Shown here one piece after another: positions 26,035 through 49,034 of a stretch of 64,000 nt of DNA. Within the stretch, counting starts at the first letter, position 1. Each line of letters begins with the position of its first letter. The stretch covers positions 237,551-301,550 of IMG/VR virus record IMGVR_UViG_3300036760_000522. One strand, 5' to 3'. The notes beneath the pieces are model-generated. The model ran no database searches and was not told the origin of the DNA. It saw nothing but the letters and a program-made list of their open reading frames with translations. A program made the position numbers and the translations under genes.

Positions 26035-26036
26035 AA

Positions 26037-34695: not shown

Positions 34696-34725
34696 CTCGA
34701 TTTTTAGGCCTCGCAATTCGTAGTA
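34696..34725 (+). promoter_or_regulatory. Bipartite phage promoter motif A, copy 1
   Basis: CTCGATT-TTT-AGGC-CTCGCA-ATTCGTAGTA, ending 9 nt before ATG 34735. Confidence 0.7.
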
Positions 34726-34734
34726 ACAGGTAAC

Positions 34735-35853
34735 ATGCAAAACACCAGCACTGCCTACGGTTCTGTTCTTGTCGGGCTTGAAGCTCGCTTAGTGAAAATC
34801 ACAGCTACCGCGACGCCTAATAGTTCGCTGTGCATTGTTGGATTACCTGAAGCCGCAATGCGGGAAACTCGTTTGCGCGTCTGTGTGGTAGCTCATCCGC
34901 TCAACGTCAAAGTCGTCGTGCACGATCTCCCGGAAGGAGTGTCTACGGCTCCTCTAGATCTGGCAATCGCTGCCGCAATCATGCGAGCTTTAGGAACACC
35001 TGTTGCAGCTGATCCTGCAACAATTTTCGTGGGCGCGTTGGCACCTGACGGCGCAGTCCGTTCCGTGTCCGGAGTTCTCTGTCGGATCGACACGACACGC
35101 CCGATCGTTGTACCTTCTGAAAATGCTTGGGAAGCAGGTCTCGTACCCGGAGCAGAGTGTTACACGTTGCTAAACTTCCATCAATTGAGAGGTGAACTCG
35201 CCCGTATCCAACCGCACCAACTGTCAGATCACACTCGCGACGGGGCTGTGCGGGCCAGCCCACAATTTGAAGACCTTTCCGAGCCCTTGAAGATCGCCTA
35301 TCAGGCGTGTGTTGGTCACAAACGTCTCTTGCTCGTCGGTCGCCCGGGAGTTGGTAAGACAATACTTGCTCGGGTTCTCGCGTCGAGCATGGAACCCCTC
35401 TCTCCTGAAGAGAGCTTGGAAGTCGCCAAGGTCTACAGCGTGTGTGGCCTAGCGAACGCTCTAACGAAACAACGACCGTTTCGAGCACCTCACCATACGG
35501 TCTCTGAAGCCGGCTTGGTCGGCGGGGGTGTTAATCCGCGGCCGGGTGAGGTCTCTCTCGCTCACCGAGGCGTTCTGTTCCTCGACGAAGTACTTGAATA
35601 CACACTATCGCGGCTTACTAGCCTTGGTGGCGTTCTCCGGAGCCAGGAAGCCGTGTTTGCACGCTCAGGCGCCGTCGTCAGACTTCCAGCGGTACCCGCT
35701 GCGGTCATAGCCGCGTCGAACCCCTGCCCGTGCGGATATTTGGGTTCGGAGATCCGCTCGTGTCGCTGCTCTGAAGAGACGGTACGGAAGTACCAAAAAC
35801 GTCTCGCTGAGTGTGCAGAAATTCTCGGTCTCCACATCGTCAACATAACATGA
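34735..35853 (+). CDS. comM: ComM/YifB (Mg-chelatase-related) AAA+ ATPase, C-terminally truncated
   Basis: IVGLPEAAMRE, GRPGVGKT, RPFRAPHHTVS..GG..PGEVSLAHRGVLFLDE, NPCPCGY..CRC..YQKRL. It ends before the usual SGPLLDRID. Confidence 0.8.
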   Translation: MQNTSTAYGSVLVGLEARLVKITATATPNSSLCIVGLPEAAMRETRLRVCVVAHPLNVKVVVHDLPEGVSTAPLDLAIAAAIMRALGTPVAADPATIFVGALAPDGAVRSVSGVLCRIDTTRPIVVPSENAWEAGLVPGAECYTLLNFHQLRGELARIQPHQLSDHTRDGAVRASPQFEDLSEPLKIAYQACVGHKRLLLVGRPGVGKTILARVLASSMEPLSPEESLEVAKVYSVCGLANALTKQRPFRAPHHTVSEAGLVGGGVNPRPGEVSLAHRGVLFLDEVLEYTLSRLTSLGGVLRSQEAVFARSGAVVRLPAVPAAVIAASNPCPCGYLGSEIRSCRCSEETVRKYQKRLAECAEILGLHIVNIT

Positions 35854-36638
35854 AACTACTGAAGATCATCGGATACCTGTTCTCGGCCTATGCGGCCTTC
35901 GTGTTGGTTCGTCAGGGGATCACCTATTTGCGTGCAGGTGTGATCACCGAAGCGGATCACCGAAGTTTCGAATCTGAGGCTGCCAAGCTGGTTGGCGGAG
36001 ACACAACAGCGGCACGGTATGATCGAGCTGCCCGACAATTCGTCATTCACGTAGACCTCGAAAAGCCTGCGCAGTGGATCCCCAACGACTTCATGAGTCG
36101 CGTTGAGGCTTGTCGTGACCAGGCTACAAGCGACATCAAGAAACTGGCGGGTTACAAGGTGACGTGGAAGCACATCTACCGCAACCGGACGACGGACCAA
36201 ACCCACGAACGTGTGGTCAGTCCGAAAGACTGTCTCGAAGTCCAGGACAACTTCGCTCGGCACACTTTCAGTCCACGCGACTTACAAGATCTTGAGCGGT
36301 TCGCTGCGTCAGAAATGGGACAACGCACGTCGAATGTGTCCGGCGACCCCCAACTTGAGTCAGTAATCACAGGCTCCAAGTTCGATAGCGCGACGCGGGC
36401 CTACCGCACAGAGATCACGTTCATTCGAAATGACCTTGATATCCGGCGTGGCGATACGCACACAGTCGCACCAGACGCTGTCTCGAGCACGCTCAACGAT
36501 CTCTGTCGAGCCCCCATGTTCAAAGAGATTATCGAGCTTGGTGGCACCTTCCAGATGGATTACGTCATCGCGGATCGCCAGCAGAAACCGTTGTCGCAGT
36601 TCACAGTTCAATCTGAGCACTGTCCAAGGACCAGATGA
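35850..36638 (+). CDS. Membrane-anchored protein with two Cys-bounded repeats
   Basis: N-terminal hydrophobic helix; two C..Y..C modules recalling AspS2-type pilotin domains (weak). Confidence 0.55.
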   Translation: MKLLKIIGYLFSAYAAFVLVRQGITYLRAGVITEADHRSFESEAAKLVGGDTTAARYDRAARQFVIHVDLEKPAQWIPNDFMSRVEACRDQATSDIKKLAGYKVTWKHIYRNRTTDQTHERVVSPKDCLEVQDNFARHTFSPRDLQDLERFAASEMGQRTSNVSGDPQLESVITGSKFDSATRAYRTEITFIRNDLDIRRGDTHTVAPDAVSSTLNDLCRAPMFKEIIELGGTFQMDYVIADRQQKPLSQFTVQSEHCPRTR

Positions 36639-37207
36639 CGACTCCCCAGCAACTGGAAAAGCGAGCCGCGTTTCTGACTCACAAACACGGAATCCCATCA
36701 CTCGGCGTCACAGGTTCTTACCACGACGCACCGCTCCGTCGGGTCGAATTTGTCTTACATGAGGGAGCTCACTGGATAACACTAGGTTACACGACGGTGC
36801 CATCCAGAGCCACACAGAAGACCTCGGAGCTGTTTGAGCGAATGACACCGACGACAGCGGACTCGTTGGAAATCGACACCGCTTTCGTAACCTATCTCGC
36901 AGGTTGTGCGCTCAATTTGTGGTACGATCCAATGCCCATCATCGATTCAGCCTGCCGAAATCTGGTATGCCACAACACCTTGGCTGCGACAGCGACCGGA
37001 AGTCGCGCAGTCGTCATTGAGGCCTGGAAAAGACAGGTCTTGAGCCGTACCGCTCGAAGACGCCTGCGTGACATGACAGTCCGCCTTGTGTTGTGGTTCT
37101 CTCCGAGGTCAAAGCCGCTCACCAAGCTACCGACCTGGATCGGCAGTACACCATTGTGGGCTGACGACCGCGCTGTGAAGCTACCGTTCTGGATGGATCC
37201 TAGTTAG
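36635..37207 (+). CDS. Hypothetical protein
   Basis: ATGA coupling with the upstream gene. Confidence 0.55.
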   Translation: MTTPQQLEKRAAFLTHKHGIPSLGVTGSYHDAPLRRVEFVLHEGAHWITLGYTTVPSRATQKTSELFERMTPTTADSLEIDTAFVTYLAGCALNLWYDPMPIIDSACRNLVCHNTLAATATGSRAVVIEAWKRQVLSRTARRRLRDMTVRLVLWFSPRSKPLTKLPTWIGSTPLWADDRAVKLPFWMDPS

Positions 37208-37471
37208 TCTAGGGATCGGCAACTCCAGATGGTGCGCACGCGGCTCAGCAAGTTGGGCAGCTTTGTCGAGGTGAAGGGCGTAGACCTCCATGATCCGTGT
37301 GAACTCTTTACCTCGTATCTCACTGAGTTTCCAACGCACGTCTACGCCAGGCATTACGTACGTAGGCGCATCTTCGAAGTCAAAAGTGTCGCACACCACA
37401 ATCATGTGGGTTGCACCTTTCCGAACGCCCTCGTCGAACCAACCACTGATGTCTTGGGTGCTCGCTGCCAC
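37181..37471 (-). CDS. Hypothetical phage protein
   Basis: Strong RBS GAGGTGAGG before GTG. Confidence 0.6.
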   Translation of the reverse strand: MAASTQDISGWFDEGVRKGATHMIVVCDTFDFEDAPTYVMPGVDVRWKLSEIRGKEFTRIMEVYALHLDKAAQLAEPRAHHLELPIPRLTRIHPER

Positions 37472-37521
37472 AGTCCCTCACCTCAATTCCCAATCGATTT
37501 CTGATCCCTGCCTCGGAGGGC

Positions 37522-38069
37522 TCACAAGTCTCGTGTGTCGATCCACCACGAGATCAAAAACTGGACCATACGCTCTCGGTTGGGACCAGTTTTTATCTTG
37601 ATAGTGCCGACGATCATAGGATCCGGAATCTGGGGTGGCGGACCGGGCGGAGCTATACCAATCTGTCCTGAACGCGCGGGCCCGCTTGGACAGCGTCTCG
37701 AACCTTCACGTAGAACGTGACGCGACGCTTCCCCAGATCTGCTTGGCGTTGCCAACCAGCGGTTCGAATCTTCATTTTCTTGGCTGTAGCCAAATTGGTT
37801 TGGGCCTCTTCAGCGCGAGCAGCCTCAGCCTGGATCTTGCGTTCTGCCCAAGCGAGCAGTTCGCTTTGTGCCTGTACCATCTCGCCGGGGTTCCGTGCGA
37901 GAACCACCACGTCTTCGGTGATCGCTAGTTCCGGAACACGGTCCTCCGTGTCGACTTCCGGTGTCGGCTCCGATGCTGCCGCGATGACGGGATCCTGGTG
38001 CTCCACCAGCGAAGAAGGGACATCCGGTGTTTCTGGTTCTGTGGCCATCCCCGCAAAATACCAGATCAT
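37522..38069 (-). pseudogene. Probable frameshifted or internally deleted gene
   Basis: A helical N-part (37653-38069) stops early. An overlapping frame carries a protein-like C-terminus (QIGIAPP..DPMIVG..FLISWWIDTRDL) with no start of its own. Confidence 0.4.
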
Positions 38070-38119
38070 GTTTCAGTCTTCAATGCCCAATCGGTCCGAC
38101 CCCTACCGGAAAGCAAGTG

Positions 38120-39439
38120 ATGTCGAAAATAAACGTTTTGATGGGCCGAATTGACCGACGAGACTACCAAATCTCGGTCATCGGTCTGGGCTACGTCGGG
38201 TTGCCCTTAGCGCTCGCCTTCTCGAAGAGAGGGTTCCCTGTTCTAGGCATCGACGTCGATCGACACAAAGTCGACAAGGTCAACCGACGAATATCGTACC
38301 TGAGCCACGTACCTAGCTCGCGGTTCGACGAATGTACGGCCCCCTTCAAAGCAACAACGGATTTTGAAGAGCTTCGCTTCGCGGACGCGATTCTGATTTG
38401 TGTACCGACGCCTTTGGATCATCACCAACAACCCGACATGCAATACGTCGAAGCGACCGTCGATGAAGTGAAAAGATGGTTGCGATCCGACCAACTCATT
38501 GTACTCGAGTCCACGACCTATCCCGGGACAACCGATGAGTTCATTCAACCGTTCTTGAGAAACCAAGACATACGCCTCGGACGCCCAACCAGCTTCTACC
38601 TCGCCTATTCTCCTGAACGCGAGGACCCCGGCAACACACAATTCTCGACGACCACGACGCCGAAACTTGTCGGAGGAGTTGATCCAGATTCAACTGAGCT
38701 CGCAGCACACCTCTACGGAACGATCGCTCCTGTAGTCCGCGTCGCAAATTCCCGAGTGGCCGAGGCTGCAAAACTCACTGAGAACATTTTCCGTGCGGTC
38801 AATATTGCGCTCGTCAACGAACTCAAAATCGTGTTCGACAAGATGGGGATCGATGTCTGGCAAGTGCTTGACGCGGCTGCAACTAAGCCGTTCGGCTTCA
38901 TGCGCTTCAATCCGGGTCCCGGTTGGGGAGGGCACTGCATACCGGTCGATCCGTTCTACTTGAGCTGGAAAGCGAGAGCATACGGAGTAACGCCAAAATT
39001 CATCGAGCTTGCGGGCGAGATCAATATCCGCATGCACGAGTACGTTGTAGGAAAGCTCGTCGAGGGGCTCAACGCCCAAGGAAAGGCACTACGTGATGCC
39101 AAGGTGTTGATTCTCGGCGTCGCCTACAAGGCAAACGTGGACGATTGCCGGGAGAGCCCTGCCTTCCCGATCATGGCGATGATTGTGAAGTTGGGCGGGA
39201 GTGTCCGCTACCACGACCCTCTAGTCAGCCGTATCCCTCATCTCAGAGACTGGCCCGCCTTCGTTGGGGCTGAGTCAGACCCGCTTGACGAAGCCGTTCT
39301 CAGAGGCTCTGACGCGGTCCTTGTAGTGACGGCACACTCGGCTGTCGACTACGAGATGGTCGGTAAGTACGCCAGTCTCATCGTCGACAGCCGAGGGGTG
39401 TTCAAACCTGAGCAGACCTCGCAGCTTGTACGTGCCTGA
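38120..39439 (+). CDS. UDP-glucose/GDP-mannose dehydrogenase family protein (WbpA/WecC-like)
   Basis: GLGYVGLP, ICVPTP, LESTTYPGTT, SPEREDPGN, AKLTENIFR, GPGWGGHCIPVDP, GVAYKANVDDCRESP. Confidence 0.93.
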   Translation: MSKINVLMGRIDRRDYQISVIGLGYVGLPLALAFSKRGFPVLGIDVDRHKVDKVNRRISYLSHVPSSRFDECTAPFKATTDFEELRFADAILICVPTPLDHHQQPDMQYVEATVDEVKRWLRSDQLIVLESTTYPGTTDEFIQPFLRNQDIRLGRPTSFYLAYSPEREDPGNTQFSTTTTPKLVGGVDPDSTELAAHLYGTIAPVVRVANSRVAEAAKLTENIFRAVNIALVNELKIVFDKMGIDVWQVLDAAATKPFGFMRFNPGPGWGGHCIPVDPFYLSWKARAYGVTPKFIELAGEINIRMHEYVVGKLVEGLNAQGKALRDAKVLILGVAYKANVDDCRESPAFPIMAMIVKLGGSVRYHDPLVSRIPHLRDWPAFVGAESDPLDEAVLRGSDAVLVVTAHSAVDYEMVGKYASLIVDSRGVFKPEQTSQLVRA

Positions 39440-40040
39440 ACTCCCCATGCGGACAGTAGTGGCCCGTTTGTGGATTTAGGAACCCCCAATCGTCCTCAGA
39501 CCGATCTGCCACACGAGGACCTGTTCGACAAAGCGTCCAACAACCTGTCTGTAGCAACGTAACCCGGTGAAACGTGTCGTGGCGCCACCGATTGACGTGC
39601 CCCGGAAGGAGCTTGCGGCCGATGATTTTGCGGTCTGGCATCAAACGCTCTTCGATGTACCCGCCAGTCAGTATGATGCTCGAACCCCACACCCAGCCGT
39701 GGTTGTGAAGTTCAGGATCGGCGTCCCCGCGAAAGAAGTAGTGTAAGTAGTAGCTGGTGCCAGTCGTGGGAGGGTCTTTGCGTCGCAAGTAAACACGCAG
39801 CAGGTAAGGATCCCGGGCTTCGCCTACTAGGAGGCCTTGGAACTTGAAGTGGCTCGTGAGAACGAGCCGCCACAACATGTTGGTCAACTTGCTGCCCGAC
39901 CAACGATCTTGACGCGCGCGGCGTACCAAGACGTCCGAAACTTGTTCGAAGTCTAGACCGACCGACGAACTCAGGTCAGTGAACACTCCACGAATAACAC
40001 CGATCAGTGCGAGTCGTACCGGATCTTGAGGCTGTCCCAC
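39402..40040 (-). CDS. Cupin-like protein
   Basis: LHYF..D..LHNHGW..SIILTGGYIE..FHRV..WTL. Confidence 0.6.
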   Translation of the reverse strand: MGQPQDPVRLALIGVIRGVFTDLSSSVGLDFEQVSDVLVRRARQDRWSGSKLTNMLWRLVLTSHFKFQGLLVGEARDPYLLRVYLRRKDPPTTGTSYYLHYFFRGDADPELHNHGWVWGSSIILTGGYIEERLMPDRKIIGRKLLPGHVNRWRHDTFHRVTLLQTGCWTLCRTGPRVADRSEDDWGFLNPQTGHYCPHGEFRHVQAARSAQV

Positions 40041-40618
40041 AACCTCCGATAGCCTTGTATGTCCATCTTGGCGGCCTCAGCCAAGTTGGCCTTGAGCCAA
40101 TTGTAGAACGGGGCAACGTCTCGTCGGCCCGCAGGATAGTACGAAGTGTCCTGATTGAATTTGTTGCCTTTGGGTCCTGTGATTTCCTGTCGATGTCGGA
40201 CAGACCATTCGATCTGGGTTGCTCCGATGGCAAGTCCTGTACTGGTCTCGATTTGCACCGGCGTCGTGCCGCCTGGGTTGATGTCGACTCCTCGTTCGGT
40301 TGACTCGTGCAGATCGATTTCCCCTGGATGGTCGACGAGAATGTCTTGTATGAACCCCTTGATCTTGTCGTAGTCGGAGTGTTCCGGAAGTGCCTTGCTC
40401 ATGCCATCCATCCACTGGTCGCGGTCACCTGGGTAGCGGTTGGACGGGAGAAGAATCATCGTACGGACTTTCTTCCCACGCTTGCCAGCGTTGGTGAGCT
40501 CCCAAACTCGGAACTGATCCCGGTAGCGGTGGATTCGGACATTGCCGACCTCAGTTTGTTGGCCAAGTTGGAGGCCTGAAGCTTTGAACCTTCGGACTAC
40601 GTTGGACACAGCTGTCAT
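40004..40618 (-). CDS. Hypothetical protein with the shared N-terminal leader
   Basis: Starts MTAVSNVVRRFKAS. Confidence 0.65.
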   Translation of the reverse strand: MTAVSNVVRRFKASGLQLGQQTEVGNVRIHRYRDQFRVWELTNAGKRGKKVRTMILLPSNRYPGDRDQWMDGMSKALPEHSDYDKIKGFIQDILVDHPGEIDLHESTERGVDINPGGTTPVQIETSTGLAIGATQIEWSVRHRQEITGPKGNKFNQDTSYYPAGRRDVAPFYNWLKANLAEAAKMDIQGYRRLWDSLKIRYDSH

Positions 40619-40824
40619 GGCTCTTGATCCTCAGGATCCTCAGGATCCTCTGCGGTAGAGATCGGATTGACGGGTAATTGAAGGGCTTCGGCGCGAAGCA
40701 CAAGGTACGAACGAGGCGCAACGATTCCGATTTTTACGGAACTACGGTGAAGCTCCGTAATTTCCAAGACGATGTCGTCTCCGATCAGGATTTTCTGGCC
40801 CTTGCGCCTTGAGATAATCAACAT
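40615..40824 (-). CDS. csrA: CsrA/RsmA translational regulator
   Basis: MLIISRRKGQKILIGDDIVLEI..VKIGIVAP..VLRAE. Confidence 0.88.
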   Translation of the reverse strand: MLIISRRKGQKILIGDDIVLEITELHRSSVKIGIVAPRSYLVLRAEALQLPVNPISTAEDPEDPEDQEP

Positions 40825-40853
40825 ACATTCACCATCAGTGAAACAAAAGAGGA

Positions 40854-41276
40854 CTAGTTGACCTCGATCCAGTGCTCTCGGATCCCCTGAATAAGGTCCG
40901 GGCCTGACACACCATTGCTCATAGCGGCAACGAGCAACGCCACGAAGAATTTGAAGAGCGGATCCCTATCAAGTTCCGCCCTCTGTCCGTCAGGCAGCTT
41001 CGCAGCTATTGGATCAAGATTCGGCGACCCGTAGGCTTGTTTGAAGTCGTCATAACAGCGCTCGAGAAGCCGAGCCCCTTCGTCGGCTGAAAGAGGCTGC
41101 GCAGTCCAGACTTGAAGGGATTCAAGGATCCCTTCCGGCTCCAAGTTTGCCGCGATTGTCCAACACTCAATCATTGCCAAAGAGACCTTAGGCGCCACCT
41201 GCAAGATGTCCTGGCACACCCGTATGGGATTTTCACGGAACGACTTTTGAAAAGAGGCTGCGTCACGTAAGTCCAT
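40854..41276 (-). CDS. Hypothetical protein
   Basis: 140-aa ORF, ATG start. Confidence 0.5.
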   Translation of the reverse strand: MDLRDAASFQKSFRENPIRVCQDILQVAPKVSLAMIECWTIAANLEPEGILESLQVWTAQPLSADEGARLLERCYDDFKQAYGSPNLDPIAAKLPDGQRAELDRDPLFKFFVALLVAAMSNGVSGPDLIQGIREHWIEVN

Positions 41277-41688
41277 TGGCGTTCTCGACTTTCACTTGTG
41301 ATGGGACTTGTCCAGGGAACCAAAAACTGGGTGGCGACACGTCCCATTCGAGACGATCTGGTGTCTCGCCAACGACCTGAAAACCGAAACGCAAGAGACC
41401 CTCCGCGAAGCGCTTGGTCTGAACGTTCTCGACATAAATCCCCAGATTTGGGTAGCGCTGTTTCAGGTGCTCGAACAGAGTTGTGAAGGCACCACTGCCC
41501 GGCTTGGTTGCATTCAAGTTTGCGAGATCGATTGCGTCGTGCCACTCACCGCGGATGTACCTGCTTGAAACCCGCACGTAGAGCGCATCAAAGCCCGGAA
41601 AGTCGACGTACGCGTTTCTCGACAGGAGCCGTCCGTTGACTCTCCGGCCTTTGTGCCAGTAGAGGGAGAGGAACTTGTCGAGTTTCAC
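41263..41688 (-). CDS. GNAT-like protein
   Basis: IDLANL..PGSGAFT..VENV..F..L.RFGF resembles GNAT motifs A and B. Confidence 0.45.
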   Translation of the reverse strand: MKLDKFLSLYWHKGRRVNGRLLSRNAYVDFPGFDALYVRVSSRYIRGEWHDAIDLANLNATKPGSGAFTTLFEHLKQRYPNLGIYVENVQTKRFAEGLLRFGFQVVGETPDRLEWDVSPPSFWFPGQVPSQVKVENANGLT

Positions 41689-41897
41689 GACACTGTCTGA
41701 CTGCGGACAACTTCGGCTTCGTCCGCAGTAGCGTGCATACTTGGGACAACTTGACGGAAGTCGTCACAGATTGCAACAGGCCGGTAGTCGGAGGTGAATA
41801 CGTGCCCGTCGACCAATTTCGCCAAAGTCACGGCCTCTAGCAAAACGAGGCCGGTGCGCTCAAACTTGCCACTTTCCAACATCACTAGGTAGGTCAT
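41685..41897 (-). CDS. Hypothetical protein
   Basis: Start reassigned to ATG 41897, directly after promoter motif A. Confidence 0.5.
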   Translation of the reverse strand: MTYLVMLESGKFERTGLVLLEAVTLAKLVDGHVFTSDYRPVAICDDFRQVVPSMHATADEAEVVRSQTVS

Positions 41898-41903
41898 GTT
41901 GTT

Positions 41904-41933
41904 TACTACGAATCCAGAGGCCTCGGAATCGAG
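41904..41933 (-). promoter_or_regulatory. Bipartite phage promoter motif A, copy 2
   Basis: CTCGATT-CCG-AGGC-CTCTGG-ATTCGTAGTA, ending 6 nt before ATG 41897. Confidence 0.7.
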
Positions 41934-41979
41934 TACTTTCTTGACACATACGGGCGTCGATGCGAAATGGGTCAAACGC

Positions 41980-42719: not shown

Positions 42720-42734
42720 GGAGAGGTGAACGAC

Positions 42735-42998
42735 ATGAACCCCCAACTTGGTCAGAACCTCACTCTGACGGTTTCGGTATTCGTTTTAGGGTTAGCTATC
42801 TGCACCATCTTTGTAGTCGTCACCAAAGACCGCAAGCACAGAGCTCTCATGCGTCGCATGGAGCTATACCGAGAGTGGATAGAGACCGTGCCGACTATGG
42901 CCGAACCCGAACGCACACAAGGGCGGCAGCACATTGAACGGATCTTGACTTCAGGTCGCGATGACGATTTTCGAGGTCCTTGGGAAAACCGAGCATGA
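42735..42998 (+). CDS. Small membrane protein
   Basis: RBS GGAGAGG; one transmembrane helix. Confidence 0.55.
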   Translation: MNPQLGQNLTLTVSVFVLGLAICTIFVVVTKDRKHRALMRRMELYREWIETVPTMAEPERTQGRQHIERILTSGRDDDFRGPWENRA

Positions 42999-43008
42999 TA
43001 CCCCCTCT

Positions 43009-43479
43009 TCAGGCATTTCCGCCAGGCTGAGTTCCTCGAAGCGGTTGGGCTGGGAAAACCGTTTGAAAGATCTCGACAGCCTCCGTCGAGAGCGGCATGA
43101 TCGGTATGGCAAATCCACGATCAAGAAGAGTTGATATTAGCCTGAGAAATGTTTCTGGACTTCTTCCCAAAGTAGCCTGACTCAATAGTTTGGTCAGATC
43201 GCGGTCGCTTGCTTGAGTCTGGGTGGTTGTGACAAAATCCGCCCACTCTTTGAGCAGGACTTCTTCGACAGCTCCAGGCACGTATGCAACTGTGATGTTG
43301 AACTCTTTGTCTTGGGTCTTGAGCTGAAATACGAGACAGTCAGGTCCGGCGTTTACGACGTAGCGAAGCCCGACGAACATGTCCTCAGGCTCGAATCCAA
43401 GCCGCCGGAACAGCTGGTGGACCCCCCAAAGCTCGCGGAGGTACGGTTTTCGATAGAGCTTTGACTTGGCGTGTTTCAT
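43009..43479 (-). CDS. Hypothetical protein
   Basis: 156-aa ORF within a minus-strand run. Confidence 0.5.
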   Translation of the reverse strand: MKHAKSKLYRKPYLRELWGVHQLFRRLGFEPEDMFVGLRYVVNAGPDCLVFQLKTQDKEFNITVAYVPGAVEEVLLKEWADFVTTTQTQASDRDLTKLLSQATLGRSPETFLRLISTLLDRGFAIPIMPLSTEAVEIFQTVFPAQPLRGTQPGGNA

Positions 43480-43487
43480 GTCCGCTG

Positions 43488-43703
43488 TTAAAGGACACCA
43501 GGCTTAAGGAGGCTTGCCGAGAAACTGTGCACAGATTGGATCCGTGCTCTTATTTCTGGGCTGTGATCTAGTACGCTCGCGAGAGCTTCCGCGATGGCAC
43601 GTGGCCGTGTCTCAGGAGGCAGCCCAGCGCTAAAAGCGATAGTCCGATAGAGCCCTTTCAACGCTTCTATCTCTGAGACGAGTTGCGCTTCACGCTTGTT
43701 CAT
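43488..43703 (-). CDS. Hypothetical protein
   Basis: 71-aa ORF within a minus-strand run. Confidence 0.45.
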   Translation of the reverse strand: MNKREAQLVSEIEALKGLYRTIAFSAGLPPETRPRAIAEALASVLDHSPEIRARIQSVHSFSASLLKPGVL

Positions 43704-43953
43704 CGGCTTCCAGTCCGAGAACGCAATTCAGGTACGGAGGAACTTTGGAATCAGCCCAACGCGTCTTCAATTCCTGCACCGTCAAACGACCGTCGTAGTA
43801 AGCCTTGACGTCATCCTTCGGACCGGTGGCGTGCATCAACTTGTAGTTGTGGCCGTCGACAATGATGTGGATCCAAATCCTCGCCATACCGTGACCAGGC
43901 TGACCAGACAGCTGGTATTCCTCGTACTCCGTCGCGTGTGTTTCAATGTTCAT
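43690..43953 (-). CDS. Hypothetical protein
   Basis: RBS GAAGGAAGGG. Confidence 0.5.
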   Translation of the reverse strand: MNIETHATEYEEYQLSGQPGHGMARIWIHIIVDGHNYKLMHATGPKDDVKAYYDGRLTVQELKTRWADSKVPPYLNCVLGLEADEQA

Positions 43954-43971
43954 GATCTGCCCTTCCTTCAG

Positions 43972-44445
43972 TCACAAAGCCTCAGCGATTTCACGGAGCT
44001 TGTCGGCCTTGTCCTTCGGGCTGCGTTTTTCACATACTTGCCAATACAAGATGGATCCGTTGCACAAACGCTCCGCTGTTTGACGGACTTGTGATGGAAC
44101 GCGACCAGCTCCGAACACGTGCTCTAGTATACCCCACAACGTGCGCTGCAACACTACGGCTGTTTCGTTGAGCTGTTGTATTGAGACACTTTCCCCATTT
44201 TCGATTAGTCTCTCGACTGCATTCACCGCCTTCAAAATCTTCTTGCGATAATTCGGATTGTAAGGAATTGTGCGGACAGCCTGCGCTAGACGCTCCACTT
44301 CCTCTTGTGTGACGTCCTCCGGCAGCTTGAACGAAATGCGGAGATCTGGTCTTAGCCAGAACTTGTGTAGGATCTCGCCAGTGCCGGGTTTGACGGCGTC
44401 TGCAACCGGTTCTGTGGACACGACTTTCAATTCTTCCTCTGACAT
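43972..44445 (-). CDS. Hypothetical protein
   Basis: RBS GGAGGTG. Confidence 0.55.
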   Translation of the reverse strand: MSEEELKVVSTEPVADAVKPGTGEILHKFWLRPDLRISFKLPEDVTQEEVERLAQAVRTIPYNPNYRKKILKAVNAVERLIENGESVSIQQLNETAVVLQRTLWGILEHVFGAGRVPSQVRQTAERLCNGSILYWQVCEKRSPKDKADKLREIAEAL

Positions 44446-44745
44446 TTACGACACCTCCAGAAGCTCACCCAGAAAACTGTTCAGCCTTCCGGGGTTCGTG
44501 TAACCACGTGCCATACGGACCGTTCCGTAGGCGTACCAGTGAGCGCGAGGATCTAAGTCCTCCGCTTTTGCGCGAGCTGCCGGGACGGCGTCTAATGCAC
44601 GTTGATGTTTTTTGAAAGGACCAAGAAGCAGCCCCGTCCGCGTCCCGTCAACGACGCTCACGTAATAAGGGCCCGGCCTGGCGTCGGCCTTTTGGACGCG
44701 CCCTGTCGTCGGCGGATGTGTGTAACACAAGATCCGTTTCGACAT
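44446..44745 (-). CDS. Hypothetical protein
   Basis: Start reassigned to MSKRIL at 44745 (AGGAAG upstream). Confidence 0.5.
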   Translation of the reverse strand: MSKRILCYTHPPTTGRVQKADARPGPYYVSVVDGTRTGLLLGPFKKHQRALDAVPAARAKAEDLDPRAHWYAYGTVRMARGYTNPGRLNSFLGELLEVS

Positions 44746-45182
44746 CACTTCCTGCCTCTGACTACGAGTTTGTAAATCTCGACACATTTCGGACCGACGT
44801 GACGACTCGCTAGATGGTGGGCGGTGATTCGTGTCTCGAGATCCCAACCGCCAACCGCATTGGGCTTTTTCGATCCATTGGGTTGCACATGACCGCAAAG
44901 ACTTGAAGTATCGATTCCGCCGCTGAACTTCAACCCGATTTTCGGGCTCACCTGACGAATGTGCCAACGACTGGATGAGCTCGCTAAAGAACCCTCACAG
45001 AAGGAGTATTCGGGAGTTTTGGGCTTGAATAGGGAAACCATGCCCCTATTCTACGTTTCCTGCGGACCAGCAATTGAATCTGTTTTGACACTGTGCCCCG
45101 AATTGACAAAAAACGTGCCGCTTGTTAGCGTGGTTGTCTACTGGGAACTGAAGGGCTGGAGCGCGAGGCAAGGACAAAGCCG

Positions 45183-45536
45183 GTGACCAAGATTTGCGAG
45201 ATCGACCAAACCGAGTGGGAGGCGTGGGTAGCTGGGCGCCCGCCAGAAGTGAGAAATCTCTGTCGGACATTTCCTCCTGACCGTCTTTATCGGATGAAGT
45301 CCGGTCACCGGGTGACGATTTGTAGTTATTCAGAAAACGGGACAATGATGGTGGATGTGCGGGGTGAATACAACAAAATCACATTCGAGCGAACTGTCTT
45401 TGGCGTGAAGCCAGAGGACCTCGAAGAGTGTGAGCTTCCTGGAGAAGGGGAAGAACTCGGCGCAATGCTCACAGAGCCAAAAGAAATCGAAAACCTCCTT
45501 GACGGGATGCGTGAACACATGAAAGATCAACAATGA
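45183..45536 (+). CDS. Hypothetical protein
   Basis: GTGA/ATGA coupling with its neighbours. Confidence 0.55.
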   Translation: MTKICEIDQTEWEAWVAGRPPEVRNLCRTFPPDRLYRMKSGHRVTICSYSENGTMMVDVRGEYNKITFERTVFGVKPEDLEECELPGEGEELGAMLTEPKEIENLLDGMREHMKDQQ

Positions 45537-45832
45537 GTGTGGACGTTGTAGTAATGAATCGAGAAACCGCCGCAGTCGTCAATCTGGATATTGGTCGCCT
45601 AGACTCTGCACAGATTCGTCACGTTGACGGGCGCGGCTACGTCAACGTGACAGGTCTCGGTGTTGAGGGAAGAGTTGGTCTTTTGAAGTACTTAGATGGA
45701 CATGACTGGACGGTTCGGATGGAAACGACGCACGTACCAGATTTGTATCTGCGTGACGTGTCCGCGGACCCGCCACAACCTTCTGTGTTTTGGTTGCTGG
45801 AACGCCAAACAGCACGGAATCGCTTGCTCTAG
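45533..45832 (+). CDS. Hypothetical protein; C-terminus lies in a duplicated segment
   Basis: ATGA coupling. Confidence 0.5.
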   Translation: MSVDVVVMNRETAAVVNLDIGRLDSAQIRHVDGRGYVNVTGLGVEGRVGLLKYLDGHDWTVRMETTHVPDLYLRDVSADPPQPSVFWLLERQTARNRLL

Positions 45833-45924
45833 TATTTGTTCTCGCGACCAACCTCACGCGGGAACAGCTTCGTAACTTGAAGCGGACCCGCCACAACCTT
45901 CTGTGTTTTGGTTGCTGGAACGCC
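45764..45924 (+). repeat. Perfect 43-bp direct repeat flanking 75 bp
   Basis: GCGGACCCGCCACAACCTTCTGTGTTTTGGTTGCTGGAACGCC at 45764-45806 and 45882-45924. Confidence 0.9.
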
Positions 45925-45982
45925 GGCTTGGAGGGCCATCAGGCAGCAGATTTGACAATCCGTGAATCGGGATAACACTTAG

Positions 45983-47839
45983 TTGATGTTATTTAAGTAC
46001 CCGTCTCTGGTTTCAGTTGTCCTGCTCCTAGCCTGTAGCGATCACCAAGATTCGGTTGGACCTGTTGGCCGTGTCACACAGGCTGTAAGTTACGTTTCTG
46101 ATTCACTAAATTGCGGTGCCAGCGGCTACCAATGTAAAGGCGGTCGCACCTGTCAGACTGGCCATTGTACCCCGGTTTGGATCCCCATGTCGACCGTCGG
46201 CGCACCCGCGCCTCGGTTTGCCGCAGCTGCAACAGCCTACGAAGGGAAGTACCTGGTTGCAGGTGGCTGCACGAGTTACGACCTAAATGCGCCGGCAGAA
46301 ATTACGGCGTCAATTTACGATCCCGCGACTGATACGTGGTCTGAATTTCCGTCGTTCGACATTGAAGACAGGCGTAATCTGTCCGTGTTGTTTACGGTTC
46401 CGGACGGACTGTATTCTCTCGGCGGTGAAACACAATGCCGGCATGCCGGCATCTCCTCCTATCATACACTGGTGAAGTACGACCCGATTGGTTTGAAATG
46501 GGACCGACTCCCGTACGAAGAAGACACCATCAACGCAGGCTACAACAAGTCGATTACTGTCATTCCAGGGACCAATGAGATTTTTATCTATGGTGGTGGA
46601 GGAGGCAATGGTCCGGCCTGGTGGTATGCAGATCGCGGAAGTTTCCCTCTTCTCGAAGACACATGGCTGAGCTGGACACATCCCGGTTGCCCACTTTCCG
46701 GATGCATACGCGGAGGGGCTTTTACGACCTTCTACGACGCAGGCTTCATCCGTGTCATGGGAGGAGATCCTACCTACGGAACAGCGCCCGCAGGTTTGTC
46801 ATTCGAACTTGCAACCAGCACTTGGTCAAACTGGACGGTACCAGCCGGGACCCCGGACTTCCAAAACGACTTTTCAAACTACTCCAACACAGCTCCGACG
46901 GGTGTCGACACCGGCACGCGACTCATGTACGTCTCGGAGACGGGGAACGTCGCCATTTACGATCGCGCCTTAGGCACGTGGTCGACGGATGTTACCGCGC
47001 CGCCTAGCGGCTTCTGTGCGGGCGGATCAGCCGCTTACGTGGACGGTGAACTCGTCGTGTACTCCGGAAGCTGTGACGGCGTTCTAGCGTCCGTTGGTGC
47101 GCGCTATCAGGCGCCAGCTCCGGGATTGGCGTTCACACCAACGGTGTCAGTTACAAGCACAAGTACGACATTCACTGTCGGAGAGGTGACCCGACTCGTC
47201 ACCTTCAATGATCCATTTGGGATCGATGAGACTGAAGTCACGGCTGCGCAATACCAGGAATGTGTCACGGCTTCTTCTTGCACGGCTGCTGCGACCGGTG
47301 GCGCATGCACAAGCGGAGTCTCGGGTCTTGAACAACACCCAATCAACTGTGTCACTTACGCACAGTCCGGGGCTTACTGCTCTTGGGCCGGTAAGCGACT
47401 GCCGACCCAGCAAGAGTGGGAATACGCCGCTAGGCACAACGACCCGACCACCCACAAGTACCCTTGGGGCAACAGCACGGCGGATTACAACACGAAGTGC
47501 AACTTCTCCGTCACAACCGACGGCTACGTCGCCACAGCCCCAGTAGGCAGCTTCCCTGCTGGAAACAGCGCCCTTGGCCTCCAAGACATGGCGGGCAACG
47601 TCTGGGAGTGGACCTCGAGCCCAGCCTGCTTCAACGAAACCGGGGATTGTACGAATTGCCCGGCCGGTGGTTGTGCAAGTGCTTGCGACGTTTGCGGCAG
47701 CCCAGATCGTGTCTTCAAAGGCGGAGGTTTCACACACGCGCTTGCCTACACGCGTTCGGCATTTCGCTCTTACAACGACCCAAGCTACTCGACAGACATC
47801 CTCGGTTTTCGTTGCGCCAAGAACACCGTTGTTCCCTAG
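45983..47839 (+). CDS. Lipoprotein with Cys-rich repeat, Kelch-like propeller and FGE-sulfatase (CLec-fold) domain
   Basis: Lipobox VLLLAC; SDSLNCG..C..G..C..G.C; Kelch-like LVAGG..IYDPATDTW; HPINCVTY..AYCSWAGKRLPTQQEWEYAAR, YPWG, DMAGNVWEW, GFRCA. Confidence 0.88.
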   Translation: MMLFKYPSLVSVVLLLACSDHQDSVGPVGRVTQAVSYVSDSLNCGASGYQCKGGRTCQTGHCTPVWIPMSTVGAPAPRFAAAATAYEGKYLVAGGCTSYDLNAPAEITASIYDPATDTWSEFPSFDIEDRRNLSVLFTVPDGLYSLGGETQCRHAGISSYHTLVKYDPIGLKWDRLPYEEDTINAGYNKSITVIPGTNEIFIYGGGGGNGPAWWYADRGSFPLLEDTWLSWTHPGCPLSGCIRGGAFTTFYDAGFIRVMGGDPTYGTAPAGLSFELATSTWSNWTVPAGTPDFQNDFSNYSNTAPTGVDTGTRLMYVSETGNVAIYDRALGTWSTDVTAPPSGFCAGGSAAYVDGELVVYSGSCDGVLASVGARYQAPAPGLAFTPTVSVTSTSTTFTVGEVTRLVTFNDPFGIDETEVTAAQYQECVTASSCTAAATGGACTSGVSGLEQHPINCVTYAQSGAYCSWAGKRLPTQQEWEYAARHNDPTTHKYPWGNSTADYNTKCNFSVTTDGYVATAPVGSFPAGNSALGLQDMAGNVWEWTSSPACFNETGDCTNCPAGGCASACDVCGSPDRVFKGGGFTHALAYTRSAFRSYNDPSYSTDILGFRCAKNTVVP

Positions 47840-47853
47840 TGACAGGAACTGTC

Positions 47854-48171
47854 TCACAATTTGAGGAGCTGATCCCGTGTGAGGTTCGTCGCGAGGACAA
47901 ATACTAACTCAAACGACTCCCTACCATTTGAACTTGTGACGATTCCAGCAGCACGGGCGAATTTGGTAGCACCTTCACAAATCTCGACTTCTGCCCAAAG
48001 GTCGACGTCATTGCGAACTTCGTAGCGCAACGCCCGTCCGATCTCTTTTTGATCCGCAGTGGAGTACACAGGGACTTGTCCCGATGTTGTGGCAAGCGCT
48101 GGTAAGGCAGACGCTGGCAGCGCGTCGCTGGCGCTGAGGATGTTGATCCACATGCTACACGCCCTCGTCAA
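47854..48171 (-). CDS. Hypothetical protein; its C-terminus is homologous to 45817-45879
   Basis: Ends ESFELVFVLATNLTRDQLLKL. Confidence 0.5.
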   Translation of the reverse strand: MTRACSMWINILSASDALPASALPALATTSGQVPVYSTADQKEIGRALRYEVRNDVDLWAEVEICEGATKFARAAGIVTSSNGRESFELVFVLATNLTRDQLLKL

Positions 48172-48406
48172 CGATGAGGTTGAGGACCCGTCCCTTTACG
48201 TAGATGCTCTTCTTGACGGTCTTGTCCCAGACGCAGTGGCTATCTTCGATCGAGAAAAAAGCCTTCAAGACGCGTGAAGTAGTCTTGACTGTCGTGTTGC
48301 TGAGTCCTGGATTGACGAAATCTCTAGTGATAGTGACAGAGAGAACCCGGTCACCATCTTCTAGGATGTCTCCTGCGTTCAGGGCTTCGAGAGTCTCTGC
48401 GGTCAT
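48155..48406 (-). CDS. Hypothetical protein
   Basis: 83-aa ORF, ATG start. Confidence 0.45.
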   Translation of the reverse strand: MTAETLEALNAGDILEDGDRVLSVTITRDFVNPGLSNTTVKTTSRVLKAFFSIEDSHCVWDKTVKKSIYVKGRVLNLIVDEGV

Positions 48407-48435
48407 GACGTCGCGGATACGAGGCCCCCTGATCC

Positions 48436-48996
48436 TTACGGCTTCGAAGTGGACTTCCCTTTCAAGTTCTGTACGCGTGTGATTTCCTCAGCCGTATGTG
48501 GCGTCCCGCCTGCGTTGATCCCCAGGTACAGATCGAGTACTTCGTCGCGAGTCTCCAAGGAACAAACGCGCCATTTGAAAGTGTGAGACAACGTGCGAAG
48601 CTTACCTGTGAATTCCTTGTAACGATGACCAAAGACCCTGAGGTCGTTTCGCAAGAATTTACGTACTGCTTCGAGTCGTTGCTTGCCGTCAACAATGGTA
48701 TACGGTCCTCGGTAATCCCGGCCCCAACCAGGGCAGTTGAAGGTGAGATTCCTTCCGACTTCGCCGCCTCGTAAGGCGTACTCGACGTAGGCGACTTGTT
48801 GCGCTTCCGTCCAAACATGCGCACGCTGGAAGTCCGGCTCAAGATCAAGAGGGGCCACCCTCTCTTCAGTCTGGTGCTGGATGTGTTCCTCGAGGTAAGT
48901 CCAAAAGACGTCGATTTCGTAATGCGCGTGCGGAAATTGGGGGATGTCGTTGAAGTCCATTCCCTTTTCACTTGCGGCTTGCGGCTTGTTGGTCAT
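48436..48996 (-). CDS. Stand-alone DUF262 (ParB/Srx-like) domain protein
   Basis: PDFQRAHVW, IVDGKQRL, YLGINAGGTP. Confidence 0.8.
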   Translation of the reverse strand: MTNKPQAASEKGMDFNDIPQFPHAHYEIDVFWTYLEEHIQHQTEERVAPLDLEPDFQRAHVWTEAQQVAYVEYALRGGEVGRNLTFNCPGWGRDYRGPYTIVDGKQRLEAVRKFLRNDLRVFGHRYKEFTGKLRTLSHTFKWRVCSLETRDEVLDLYLGINAGGTPHTAEEITRVQNLKGKSTSKP

Positions 48997-49004
48997 TTGC
49001 AGCC

Positions 49005-49034
49005 TACTACGAATCCGGGTGCCTAAAAATCGAG
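49005..49034 (-). promoter_or_regulatory. Bipartite phage promoter motif A, copy 3
   Basis: CTCGATT-TTT-AGGC-ACCCGG-ATTCGTAGTA, ending 8 nt before ATG 48996. Confidence 0.7.

What the first reader, a model, noticed from the sequence alone, without database searches (positions are those of the whole stretch)
34696..49034. Fixed-spacing bipartite promoter CTCGATT-N3-AGGC-N6-ATTCGTAGTA, 6-9 nt before ATG
Seen: three copies (34696+, 41933-, 49034-) with 21 of 30 positions invariant and identical spacing. TCGATT and CGTAGT are 16 bp apart. No Shine-Dalgarno fits between the motif and the start codon. Known: many ECF promoters have CGT-type -10 elements at this spacing. Inference: the regulon of the phage ECF-like sigma, producing leaderless mRNAs for ComM-like, DUF262 and a small unknown protein.
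Basis: partly seen in the sequence, partly recalled or inferred. Interest (0 to 1): 0.65.

Follow-up and report, generated by a model that had tools for sequence, protein, structure and literature searches.

The report
Jumbo-phage promoter class abutting start codons
A 30-base two-part DNA signal occurs ten times in an uncultured 301-kb phage, almost always a few bases before a start codon, and is most likely a phage-specific promoter read by a phage-encoded ECF-type sigma factor to give mRNAs with almost no leader; this is a known kind of phage strategy, and no RNA data exist to prove it here.

Summary
The three window copies are exact and none are expected by chance. A matrix scan of the whole 301,550-bp phage genome finds exactly ten sites, well separated from noise. 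All ten point at a downstream ORF. Nine have an ATG 5-10 nt after CGTAG(T/G). About five sit in short divergent intergenic gaps that must hold a promoter. In a relative about 90% identical, the three orthologous sites keep both half-sites while the spacers mutate. One ortholog has gained a 24-nt leader with a GGAG ribosome site, so the element works on DNA and is not tied to the start codon.

No RNA structure is shared by the sites. No phage RNA polymerase was detected. The 25321-26034 product is a divergent ECF-type sigma by profile and fold, paired with a conserved 408-aa partner.

Not shown: which sigma reads the motif (a third sigma-4 protein exists, the host is unknown, and the sigma operon carries no copy), the transcription start, and leaderless translation. 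Shine-Dalgarno use is low throughout this genome, so "no SD" is a weak argument.

Closest precedent: Salmonella phage 7-11 gp47, with eight GTAAtg-N16-aCTA promoters. Verdict: a real promoter class, a new member of a known kind, of moderate interest.

The parts
34696..34725 (+). Motif copy 1 (genome 272246-272275). The -35-like TCGATT is at 34697-34702 and the -10-like CGTAGT at 34719-34724. The ATG at 34735 is 10 nt after the hexamer. The site lies in an 83-nt divergent gap.
   Evidence: The ortholog in G001 keeps both blocks.
34681..34695 (+). A-rich stretch just upstream of the -35-like block (consensus ccgAAAtagtAC across the ten sites). Possibly an UP-like or extended -35 element.
   Evidence: alignment of the ten sites. 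UP elements upstream of ECF promoters are described in PMC7776599.
34735..37207 (+). Operon behind copy 1: ComM/Mg-chelatase-like AAA+ gene (34735-35853), then ORFans of 262 aa and 190 aa.
41904..41933 (-). Motif copy 2 (genome 279454-279483). The ATG at 41897 is 7 nt after the hexamer.
40004..41897 (-). Co-directional run behind copy 2: a 70-aa ORFan (41685-41897), ORFans of 141 and about 106-140 aa, a CsrA homolog (40615-40824) and a 151-aa ORF.
   Evidence: (PF02599 CsrA)
49005..49034 (-). Motif copy 3 (genome 286555-286584). The ATG at 48996 is 9 nt after the hexamer. The site lies in a 160-nt divergent gap.
47854..48996 (-). Run behind copy 3: a GmrSD_N/DUF262-like 186-aa gene (48436-48996) and two small ORFans.
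   Evidence: phrog_1583, 1.2e-22
25321..26034 (-). 237-aa divergent ECF-type sigma factor, the candidate reader of the motif. The GTG start at 26034 is the likely true start; the public gene call of 181 aa is too short.
   Evidence: NCBIfam SigZ 33.7 bits and sigma70-ECF 30-162/165, both below cut-off. 83 family representatives. The N-terminal LPWGYRVA block is conserved in the family. The family profile hits M. tuberculosis SigH at 1.3e-7, plus SigL and SigE. AF2 pLDDT is 88.7. Top Foldseek hits are all ECF sigmas, prob 0.9-0.97.
26037..27263 (-). 408-aa conserved partner gene directly upstream of the sigma. It carries sigma-region-2-like sequence motifs. Its fold is unresolved.
   Evidence: Weak Sigma70_r2 / sigma70-ECF hits. 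27% identity, E 1e-35, to the gene upstream of a sigma homolog in L146. The same gene order is seen in L148, L151 and L153. The AF2 model is poor (pLDDT 64.7) and gave no fold match.

Best explanation
The motif is a phage-specific promoter class with ten copies in a 301.5-kb, RNA-polymerase-less jumbo phage. Host core RNA polymerase, carrying a phage-encoded ECF-type sigma, binds TCGATT as the -35 element and (A)TTCGTAG as the -10 element, 16 nt apart. The most likely sigma is the 237-aa product of 25321-26034, possibly working with its conserved 408-aa neighbour. Transcription would start about 6-9 nt after the -10 block. At eight or nine sites that is within 0-4 nt of an ATG, giving leaderless or near-leaderless mRNAs for small ORFans, a ComM-like ATPase, a DUF262 protein and a CsrA operon. 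The Ku-operon site instead has an SD-containing leader, and the methyltransferase-operon site has a 29-aa ORF ahead of an SD-led gene. Shown: the motif family, its geometry, its conservation pattern, the absence of an RNA fold, the ECF-type nature of the protein, and the absence of a detectable phage RNA polymerase. Inferred: promoter activity, the identity of the sigma, the start site, and leaderless translation.
For: There are exactly ten high-scoring sites and nothing in between. The 8-mer ATTCGTAG occurs 13 times in the genome, nine of them paired with the upstream block. All sites point at an ORF. Nine of ten have an ATG 5-10 nt after the hexamer, and seven of these ORFs are 70 aa or longer, against 1.7% of random positions with an ATG-ORF of at least 60 aa at that distance. 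All nine close start codons are ATG. About five sites lie in divergent gaps of 59-160 nt, leaving little room for any other promoter. In relative G001, across the three orthologous sites, there are 0 changes in the 33 -35/-10 core positions and 11 changes in the 48 spacer positions. The ComM ortholog has a 24-nt insertion with GGAG between motif and ATG, and the 195489 ortholog has a 1-nt deletion there. There is no consensus RNA structure. No other strongly conserved two-block motif appears in the intergenic DNA. No RNA polymerase beta, beta' or T7-type domain was found. The sigma family is ECF-type by profile and fold and has no region 3. Sites with a long leader carry good SD sites. Precedents: phage 7-11 gp47 with eight GTAAtg-N16-aCTA promoters and starts 6-9 bp downstream (PMC8948821); RNAP-less jumbo phages that encode sigmas (PMC7824862); ECF promoters with 16-18 bp spacers and leaderless ECF transcripts in Actinobacteria (PMC7776599).
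Against: No RNA run holds this phage, so no start site is known. Nothing ties the motif to this sigma. The motif is absent upstream of the sigma operon. Two other sigma-like proteins exist. Fragments that carry 33-50% identical sigma homologs show no such motif, although only 2-20 kb of each could be read. TCGATT lacks the AAC core of typical ECF -35 elements. The conserved AGGC inside the spacer is unusual for a purely sigma-read promoter and could mark a second factor. The driven genes (DNA-end protection, methylation, ORFans) look early, which would favour a factor already present at infection. SD use is low genome-wide, so a missing SD does not by itself show leaderless translation. The hexamer-to-ATG distance varies from 5 to 10 nt.
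Confidence: 0.5

Rival explanations
1. The motif is a promoter read by a host sigma factor. This could be a host ECF or other alternative sigma, for example one induced by infection stress, or a primary sigma of unusual specificity. The motif would then define the phage's early genes, and the phage sigma-like proteins would serve other promoters.
For: The gene content behind the sites looks early or host-takeover: a Ku homolog, a giant methyltransferase, a DUF262 protein, CsrA and many ORFans. Eight of ten sites cluster in one contiguous accessory region (272 kb through the record's start to 27 kb) with frequent strand switches. The sigma operon lacks the motif. The host is unknown.
Against: The -10-like block never has the TAnnnT form needed by primary sigmas; the sixth base is A, G or C. 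About 25 conserved positions is far more than host-sigma phage promoters usually keep. Sigma-70-like sites are not enriched in the region (9 found against 6.7 expected). The phage invests in a conserved sigma module that needs promoters, and no other conserved two-block motif was found.
Confidence: 0.22
2. The motif is a binding site for a phage DNA-binding regulator. This could be an activator that replaces -35 recognition, as MotA does at T4 middle promoters, or a repressor covering promoter and start codon. It would then not be a plain -35/-10 pair.
For: Conservation extends beyond two hexamers: CTCGATTT, AGGC inside the spacer, and GATTCGTAGTA. The 408-aa partner protein gives only weak winged-helix/MarR-type fold hits. 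GATT recurs in both blocks.
Against: The site is neither a palindrome nor a clean direct repeat. Its fixed orientation and fixed distance to genes, and its presence in gaps with no room for another promoter, mean that promoter function is still needed at the same place. This rival therefore mostly refines the main model rather than replacing it.
Confidence: 0.15
3. The motif acts in RNA, as a translational operator or ribosome-loading element in a 5' leader transcribed from further upstream. One candidate binder is the phage CsrA.
For: The motif lies immediately before start codons. The phage encodes CsrA. The sites lack SD sequences.
Against: There is no shared RNA fold and no covariation. 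There is no GGA-in-loop CsrA-type motif. In several divergent gaps only about 20-45 nt remain upstream for a promoter. In G001 a 24-nt SD-containing insertion separates the motif from the ATG without loss of the motif. At 131503 the motif is 24 nt from the ATG.
Confidence: 0.06
4. The motif is a repeat without regulatory function, such as a remnant of a small mobile element or of duplicated gene heads.
For: This genome does hold another short dispersed repeat.
Against: Flanks and spacers differ completely between copies while two blocks stay fixed. The downstream proteins are unrelated to each other. Orthologs show the half-sites conserved while the spacers change.
Confidence: 0.02

Closest known systems
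Late promoters of Salmonella phage 7-11 read by the phage sigma gp47 (PMC8948821)
   Same: The phage encodes a divergent sigma-70-family protein that uses host core polymerase. It has a small set of promoters (eight) with a two-block consensus and a 16-bp spacer. The start lies 6-9 bp after the downstream block.
   Different: The consensus differs (GTAAtg-N16-aCTA against TCGATT-N16-CGTAG). In 7-11 the promoters precede late structural genes and give leadered mRNAs. Here they precede ORFans and accessory genes and abut the start codon. The sigma families are unrelated at sequence-search level (no PHROG hit; no tblastn hit in 50,697 phage records).
phiEco32 gp36 (ECF-like phage sigma) middle and late promoters, with co-factor gp79 (PMC8948821, PMC12276001)
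   Same: An ECF-like phage sigma redirects host core polymerase with help from a second phage protein. The sigma chain of the gp79 open complex (9m7y_F) is among the fold hits of the 237-aa model.
   Different: gp36 promoters are a single element (tAATGTAtA) with no -35 block, because gp36 lacks region 4. Here both blocks and a region-4-like helix-turn-helix are present.
Bacterial ECF (group 4) sigma promoters, e.g. B. subtilis SigW TGAAAC-N16-CGTA and P. aeruginosa PvdS TAAAT-N16-CGT (consensus recalled from own knowledge; spacer rule from PMC7776599)
   Same: Two blocks, a 16-nt spacer, a CGT(A) core in the -10 block and high information content. Leaderless ECF-dependent transcripts are known in Actinobacteria.
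   Different: The -35 block TCGATT has no AAC. There is no sign of autoregulation of the sigma operon. No anti-sigma gene was recognised. The extra AGGC in the spacer is unusual.
RNAP-less 'group 2' jumbo phages that carry their own sigma factors (PMC7824862)
   Same: A genome over 200 kb with no phage RNA polymerase detected and phage-encoded sigma-like proteins.
   Different: Those phages use T4-type gp55/gp33 or RpoD-like sigmas. Here the module is an ECF-type sigma with an N-terminal LPWGYRVA extension, a 400-aa partner and an adjacent DNA methyltransferase.
Leaderless phage and actinobacterial mRNAs (lambda cI from PRM; mycobacterial leaderless transcriptome, PMC3898074)
   Same: The -10 element lies about 7 nt before an AUG that would be the 5' end of the mRNA, and the start codon is strictly ATG.
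   Different: Those promoters are read by primary sigmas with TAnnnT. Here a dedicated non-canonical promoter class would be built around leaderless starts, and this is unproven.

Membership tests
ECF (group 4) sigma-70-family factor (protein 25321-26034) | Only sigma-2 and sigma-4 domains, with no region 3 or 1.1 | tested here: met
   NCBIfam sigma70-ECF aligns to profile positions 30-162 of 165. The family profile hits SigH, SigL, SigE and SigK chains. The AF2 model's top fold hits are all ECF sigmas. There is no Sigma70_r3 hit in the genome.
ECF (group 4) sigma-70-family factor (protein 25321-26034) | Scores above the curated family thresholds | tested here: not met
   TIGR02937 scores 21.2 bits against a cut-off of 42.9. 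No Pfam family was found at E<=0.01. The protein is a divergent relative with a family-specific N-terminal extension of about 75 aa.
ECF (group 4) sigma-70-family factor (protein 25321-26034) | Binds core RNA polymerase and directs initiation at a cognate promoter | not testable with these tools
   This needs in vitro transcription or a reporter assay.
ECF (group 4) sigma-70-family factor (protein 25321-26034) | Co-transcribed anti-sigma factor | tested here: inconclusive
   A conserved 408-aa gene lies upstream. It shows sigma-region-2-like motifs rather than a known anti-sigma domain, and its fold is unresolved.
ECF-type -35/-10 promoter | Two conserved blocks separated by a fixed 16-18 bp spacer | tested here: met
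   The spacer is 16 nt in all ten sites and in the three G001 orthologs. The spacer rule comes from PMC7776599.
ECF-type -35/-10 promoter | CGT core in the -10 block | tested here: met
   CGTAG is invariant in all ten sites.
ECF-type -35/-10 promoter | AAC-containing -35 block (GGAAC/TGAAC type) | tested here: not met
   The -35-like block is TCGATT, TCAATT or TCCATT.
ECF-type -35/-10 promoter | Copy upstream of the sigma's own operon (autoregulation) | tested here: not met
   No site lies near window 27264-27343. Only a TCGATTTTGGA half-match is present there.
ECF-type -35/-10 promoter | Transcription start a few nt downstream of the -10 block | not testable with these tools
   No RNA run holds the sequence. 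The three DNA runs were laid but are contigs only.
Leaderless mRNA | 5' end at or within a few nt of the start codon | not testable with these tools
   Inferred only from the 5-10 nt between hexamer and ATG.
Leaderless mRNA | AUG (not GUG or UUG) start codon | tested here: met
   All nine close start codons are ATG. The G001 orthologs keep the same N-termini.
Leaderless mRNA | No Shine-Dalgarno site, in contrast to leadered genes | tested here: inconclusive
   There is no room for an SD at the nine sites. The two long-leader sites (131503+ and the G001 ComM ortholog) and the gene behind the 29-aa ORF at 27416+ carry AGGAG, GGAG and GGAGG. However, only about a fifth of nearby genes have any SD.

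The most novel reading that the evidence does not exclude
An uncharacterised, phage-restricted two-gene sigma module (an ECF-type sigma with an LPWGYRVA N-terminal domain plus a 400-aa sigma-region-2-like partner, next to a DNA methyltransferase) drives a promoter class built so that transcription starts on the start codon. The phage would then own a leaderless regulon whose translation does not depend on ribosome-binding sites, perhaps shielding these genes from host or phage (CsrA-type) translational control.
Probability: 0.2. Interest if true: 0.7.

Novelty: new member of a known kind. Interest (0 to 1): 0.5.

Why it matters
If correct, this gives a defined ten-promoter regulon and a candidate cognate sigma for an uncultured jumbo phage whose sigma family has no isolated or characterised member. 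The pairing could be tested in vitro without the host. It would add an orthogonal sigma/promoter pair to the ECF toolbox. It would also be the first phage promoter class arranged systematically for leaderless translation. Practically, it corrects a gene call (sigma of 237 aa, not 181 aa), and it marks about 30 ORFan and accessory genes as one co-regulated set.

Tried and rejected
- **Motif scan of IMG/VR (14 specified bases):** 117+ single matches, as expected by chance, so not informative.
- **Relatives through the ComM-like protein:** only one close relative, G001, was found.
- **Sigma homologs by word-index search:** only the phage itself and G001. The exhaustive search gave 83 representatives.
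- **Fetching their loci:** the full alignment was too diverse. A six-sequence subset found nothing in IMG/VR, seven short loci in metagenomes and nothing in GTDB genomes.
- **Motif in those fragments:** neither the matrix nor a relaxed ATT-N-CGTA-ATG pattern recurs. There is one lone look-alike at L153:161. The co-occurrence test of sigma and motif therefore stayed open. The 158-kb contig of the nearest homolog could not be read.
- **Isolated phages:** tblastn of the sigma against phage records gave no match.
- **RNA evidence:** there are no RNA runs. Laying three DNA runs on 3,001 bases showed the same phage at low depth in two other sediment samples, but no cover of the motif.
- **RNA structure and known RNAs:** no consensus fold. 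No Rfam family or tRNA in the window.
- **Sigma-70 consensus scan:** not enriched.
- **Other two-block motifs:** dyad enumeration found none as strong.
- **The 408-aa partner:** no solved relative by sequence. The model is poor and gave no credible fold match. I therefore do not call it a sigma.
- **Host inference from UDP-glucose dehydrogenase:** best hits are Polyangiaceae (60-62%), then Acidobacteriota and Planctomycetota. This does not resolve the host.
- **GIY-YIG + HTH protein at genome ~110.6 kb:** rejected as a sigma; it is a homing-endonuclease-like protein.

Full report
**What the window is.** The window is bases 237,551-301,550 of a 301,550-bp virus record from a sediment metagenome (JGI 3300036760), flagged as having terminal repeats. 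Window coordinate = genome coordinate minus 237,550. G+C is about 53%. My own crude gene caller gives 339 genes covering 89% of the genome.

**Observation.** The 30-mer CTCGATT-N3-AGGC-N6-ATTCGTAGTA matches exactly at window 34696-34725 (+), 41904-41933 (-) and 49005-49034 (-). No further match appears with up to three mismatches, and none in 100 shuffles. The ATG follows the 30-mer by 9, 6 and 8 nt. The downstream products are a ComM/Mg-chelatase-like AAA+ protein, a 70-aa ORFan and a GmrSD_N (DUF262) protein.

**The family is larger than three.**
- A pattern search of the whole genome found eight sites. A position matrix found ten.
- The ten sites are genome 16338-, 17001-, 17647-, 18036-, 27416+, 131503+, 195489+, 272247+, 279482- and 286583-.
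- Their scores are 23-49. The next best hit scores 11.4, and shuffled genomes reach 5-18.
- The consensus over the ten is ccgAAAtagtAC-TCgATTT-cgAGgc-N5-gATTCGTAG-(t/g)A.
- The 8-mer ATTCGTAG occurs 13 times in the genome. Nine of those are paired with the upstream block at the same 16-nt distance.
- No other two-block motif of comparable strength exists in the intergenic DNA.

**Position relative to genes.**
- Every site points toward an ORF. The distance from CGTAG(T/G) to the next ATG is 5, 7, 7, 7, 7, 9, 9, 9 and 10 nt at nine sites, and 24 nt at 131503+.
- Seven of the nine ATGs open ORFs of 70-372 aa. Only 1.7% of random positions have an ATG-ORF of at least 60 aa at that distance.
- The other two open ORFs of 35 aa (18036-) and 29 aa (27416+). 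The 29-aa ORF is followed by GGAGG and an ATG that starts a gene of about 261 aa.
- Site 131503+ has AGGAG nine nt before its ATG.
- About five sites (27416+, 131503+, 272247+, 286583-, probably 279482-) lie in divergent intergenic gaps of 59-160 nt. The rightward or leftward gene must get its promoter from that gap, and the motif fills most of it.
- Four sites stand in series within 1.7 kb (16.3-18.0 kb), each before a small gene.
- At 195489+ the motif overlaps the end of the preceding methyltransferase-like gene, whose stop codon is the TAG of CGTAGG.

**Comparative footprint.**
- The only relative found through the ComM-like protein is a 159-kb IMG/VR contig (G001), about 90% identical and collinear with genome 111-275 kb.
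- G001 holds orthologs of three sites, and all three keep the motif.
- Over these three pairs there is no change in the 33 positions of TC(G/A)ATT and CGTAG. There are 11 changes in the 48 spacer positions.
- In the ComM ortholog, 24 nt containing GGAG are inserted exactly between the conserved ...GTAAC and the ATG. The protein N-terminus is unchanged.
- In the 195489 ortholog one base is lost between hexamer and ATG. In the 131503 ortholog about 38 nt are inserted after the motif.
- The element is therefore kept as DNA, independently of its distance to the start codon. A ribosome site appears when a leader exists.

**Rival readings at the RNA level.** RNAalifold on the ten sites gives no pairs at all. 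Rfam and tRNA scans of the window are empty. The phage encodes a CsrA homolog, but the motif has no GGA-in-loop feature. I rate a translational-operator reading as unlikely.

**Which polymerase.**
- Six-frame searches of the genome find no RNA polymerase beta (PF00562), beta' catalytic (PF00623) or T7-type (PF00940) domain. The T7-type search had no positive control.
- This fits the described class of jumbo phages that lack a polymerase and carry sigma factors (PMC7824862).
- Sigma-like frames found: window 25321-26034 (-), window 26037-27263 (-), a sigma-4 protein at genome ~230.4-231.1 kb, and a GIY-YIG+HTH protein that I set aside as a homing endonuclease.
- No sigma region 3 is present anywhere.

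**The 237-aa protein.**
- Pfam finds nothing. NCBIfam gives sub-threshold but full-length ECF hits (SigZ 33.7 bits; sigma70-ECF positions 30-162 of 165).
- The exhaustive search finds 83 cluster representatives, typically 250-290 aa. Their N-terminal ~75 residues (…IYASLPWGYRVA…GR..YA.F…GV.G.P) are also encoded upstream of the publicly called start in this window.
- A profile of 40 members hits M. tuberculosis SigH (1.3e-7), S. coelicolor SigR region 2, SigL, SigE and SigK.
- The AlphaFold model (pLDDT 88.7) has ECF sigmas as all of its top Foldseek hits (probability 0.9-0.97, E about 0.04-0.1). Among them is the sigma chain of the phiEco32 gp79 complex.
- It is a divergent ECF-type sigma of an uncharacterised family. 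It has no PHROG, no tblastn match in 50,697 phage records, and no match in GTDB genomes by the one peptide pattern that could be used.

**The partner.**
- The 408-aa gene directly upstream is 27% identical (E 1e-35) to the gene upstream of a sigma homolog in another metagenome. The same order recurs in three further loci, often followed by an N6/N4 DNA methyltransferase, as here.
- Its conserved blocks (Q.VW..L and GRGFKSYL..A..NH.KN..RTR.RRHKER) resemble sigma region 2, and it gets weak region-2 hits.
- It has no solved relative by sequence. Its model is poor and unmatched. Its role as co-sigma, anti-sigma or activator is open.

**Link between sigma and motif.** This is the weak point.
- The sigma operon has no copy of the motif.
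- Fragments carrying 33-50% identical homologs show no recurring look-alike, but only 2-20 kb of each could be read.
- There is no RNA run, and DNA contigs from two other sediments do not cover the site.
- The argument therefore rests on parsimony. A polymerase-less phage has a conserved ECF-type sigma module and exactly one highly conserved promoter-like motif with ECF geometry (16-nt spacer, CGT core).
- Against it: TCGATT lacks the usual AAC, AGGC in the spacer is conserved, and the driven genes look early. Those genes include a Ku homolog, an intein-containing giant methyltransferase, DUF262, CsrA and many ORFans. That leaves room for a host sigma or an extra phage factor.

**Leaderless claim.**
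- In phages 7-11 and phiEco32, sigma-dependent starts lie 6-9 bp after the promoter element (PMC8948821). From my own knowledge, E. coli sigma-E promoters start at about the seventh base after the -10 block.
- Applied here, the start falls 0-4 nt before the ATG at eight or nine sites. All of these codons are ATG, as leaderless translation requires. ECF-driven leaderless transcripts are known in Actinobacteria (PMC7776599).
Only about 8 of 39 publicly called genes around the sites, and 26% of my own calls against 10.5% at random positions, have a GGAG/GAGG/AGGA site.
- More telling is the contrast inside the family: long-leader members carry good SD sites and short ones cannot.

**Comparison and verdict.**
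- The nearest described system is phage 7-11 gp47, with eight GTAAtg-N16-aCTA promoters.
- The strategy (a phage sigma redirecting host core polymerase to a small, sharply defined promoter set) is known.
- The sigma family, the consensus and the placement against start codons are new.
- I file the finding as a new member of a known kind. Promoter function of some sort is about 0.8 likely. The full statement (phage ECF-type sigma plus near-leaderless mRNAs) is about 0.5 likely.

Noticed in passing
window 31750+, 49089-, 37494-, 38091-, 45140+, 58054+, 31116+, 20202- (genome 269300, 286639, 275044, 275641, 282690, 295604, 268666, 257752), plus genome 63608, 120612, 124936, 140425, 161992: A second dispersed motif, (gatcagatcg)ATTGGGAATTGAAGG, has about 14 copies with at most 2 mismatches. 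It is mostly intergenic and often 0-30 nt before a start codon. One copy lies 56 nt upstream of motif copy 3. In G001 a copy is inserted between the 131503-type promoter and its gene. It could be a second promoter class, an SD-bearing leader cassette or a small mobile repeat.
   Followed up: partly
window 31734-31764 (+) and 49105-49075 (-): An identical 31-nt repeat joins a GT-rich stretch, TAGTATATT and the ATTGGGAATTGAAGG element. At the 49105-49075 copy it reads as a fair sigma-70-like promoter (TTGTGA-N18-TATATT), just upstream of the ECF-like promoter of the DUF262 gene.
   Followed up: partly
window 25321-26034 (-): The public gene call for the sigma (181 aa, start at 25866) misses a family-conserved N-terminal domain. 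The 237-aa frame from GTG 26034 fits the 83-member family.
   Followed up: yes
window 23175-27263 (-): A conserved three-gene module (400-aa sigma-region-2-like protein, ECF-type sigma, N6/N4 DNA methyltransferase) recurs in unrelated metagenome contigs. Here a 183-aa + strand ORF sits between the sigma and the methyltransferase.
   Followed up: partly
window 40615-40824 (-): A phage-encoded CsrA homolog (PF02599) lies in the operon behind motif copy 2.
   Followed up: no
genome 29708-34519 (+), outside the window (L156:2708-7519): A 1603-aa protein has an N-terminal DUF6094 methyltransferase domain and an intein (Hint plus LAGLIDADG homing endonuclease). It lies in the operon behind motif site 27416+.
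   Followed up: no
genome 132218-133174 (+), outside the window (L157:1218-2174): A Ku70/80-like protein (PF02735, 1.8e-34) lies in the operon behind motif site 131503+.
   Followed up: no
genome 17744-18003 (-), outside the window (L155): Motif site 18036- is followed only by a 35-aa ORF and about 260 nt that end in a G+C-rich hairpin without a T-run, just before the next motif copy. This may be a small RNA or micro-protein transcript.
   Followed up: no
window 45983-47839 (+): A Kelch-repeat plus FGE-sulfatase (SUMF1-like) protein of 618 aa, an unusual cargo for a phage.
   Followed up: no
window 38120-39439 (+): A phage UDP-glucose 6-dehydrogenase. Its best genomic relatives are Polyangiaceae (60-62%), then Acidobacteriota and Planctomycetota. 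This gives a weak and unresolved host hint.
   Followed up: partly
L154:70-240 (-), metagenome contig carrying a 33% identical sigma homolog: Three tandem copies, 73 bp apart, of tctcgtCGTAACGAGCAATAATG, each before a 45-48-aa ORF.
   Followed up: no
genome 230.4-231.1 kb (-), L013:1171-1833: A 220-aa protein has a strong sigma region 4 (PF08281, 44 bits) at residues 59-114 but no recognisable region 2. It lies next to a 5'-3' exonuclease gene and is a further possible transcription factor of this phage.
   Followed up: partly
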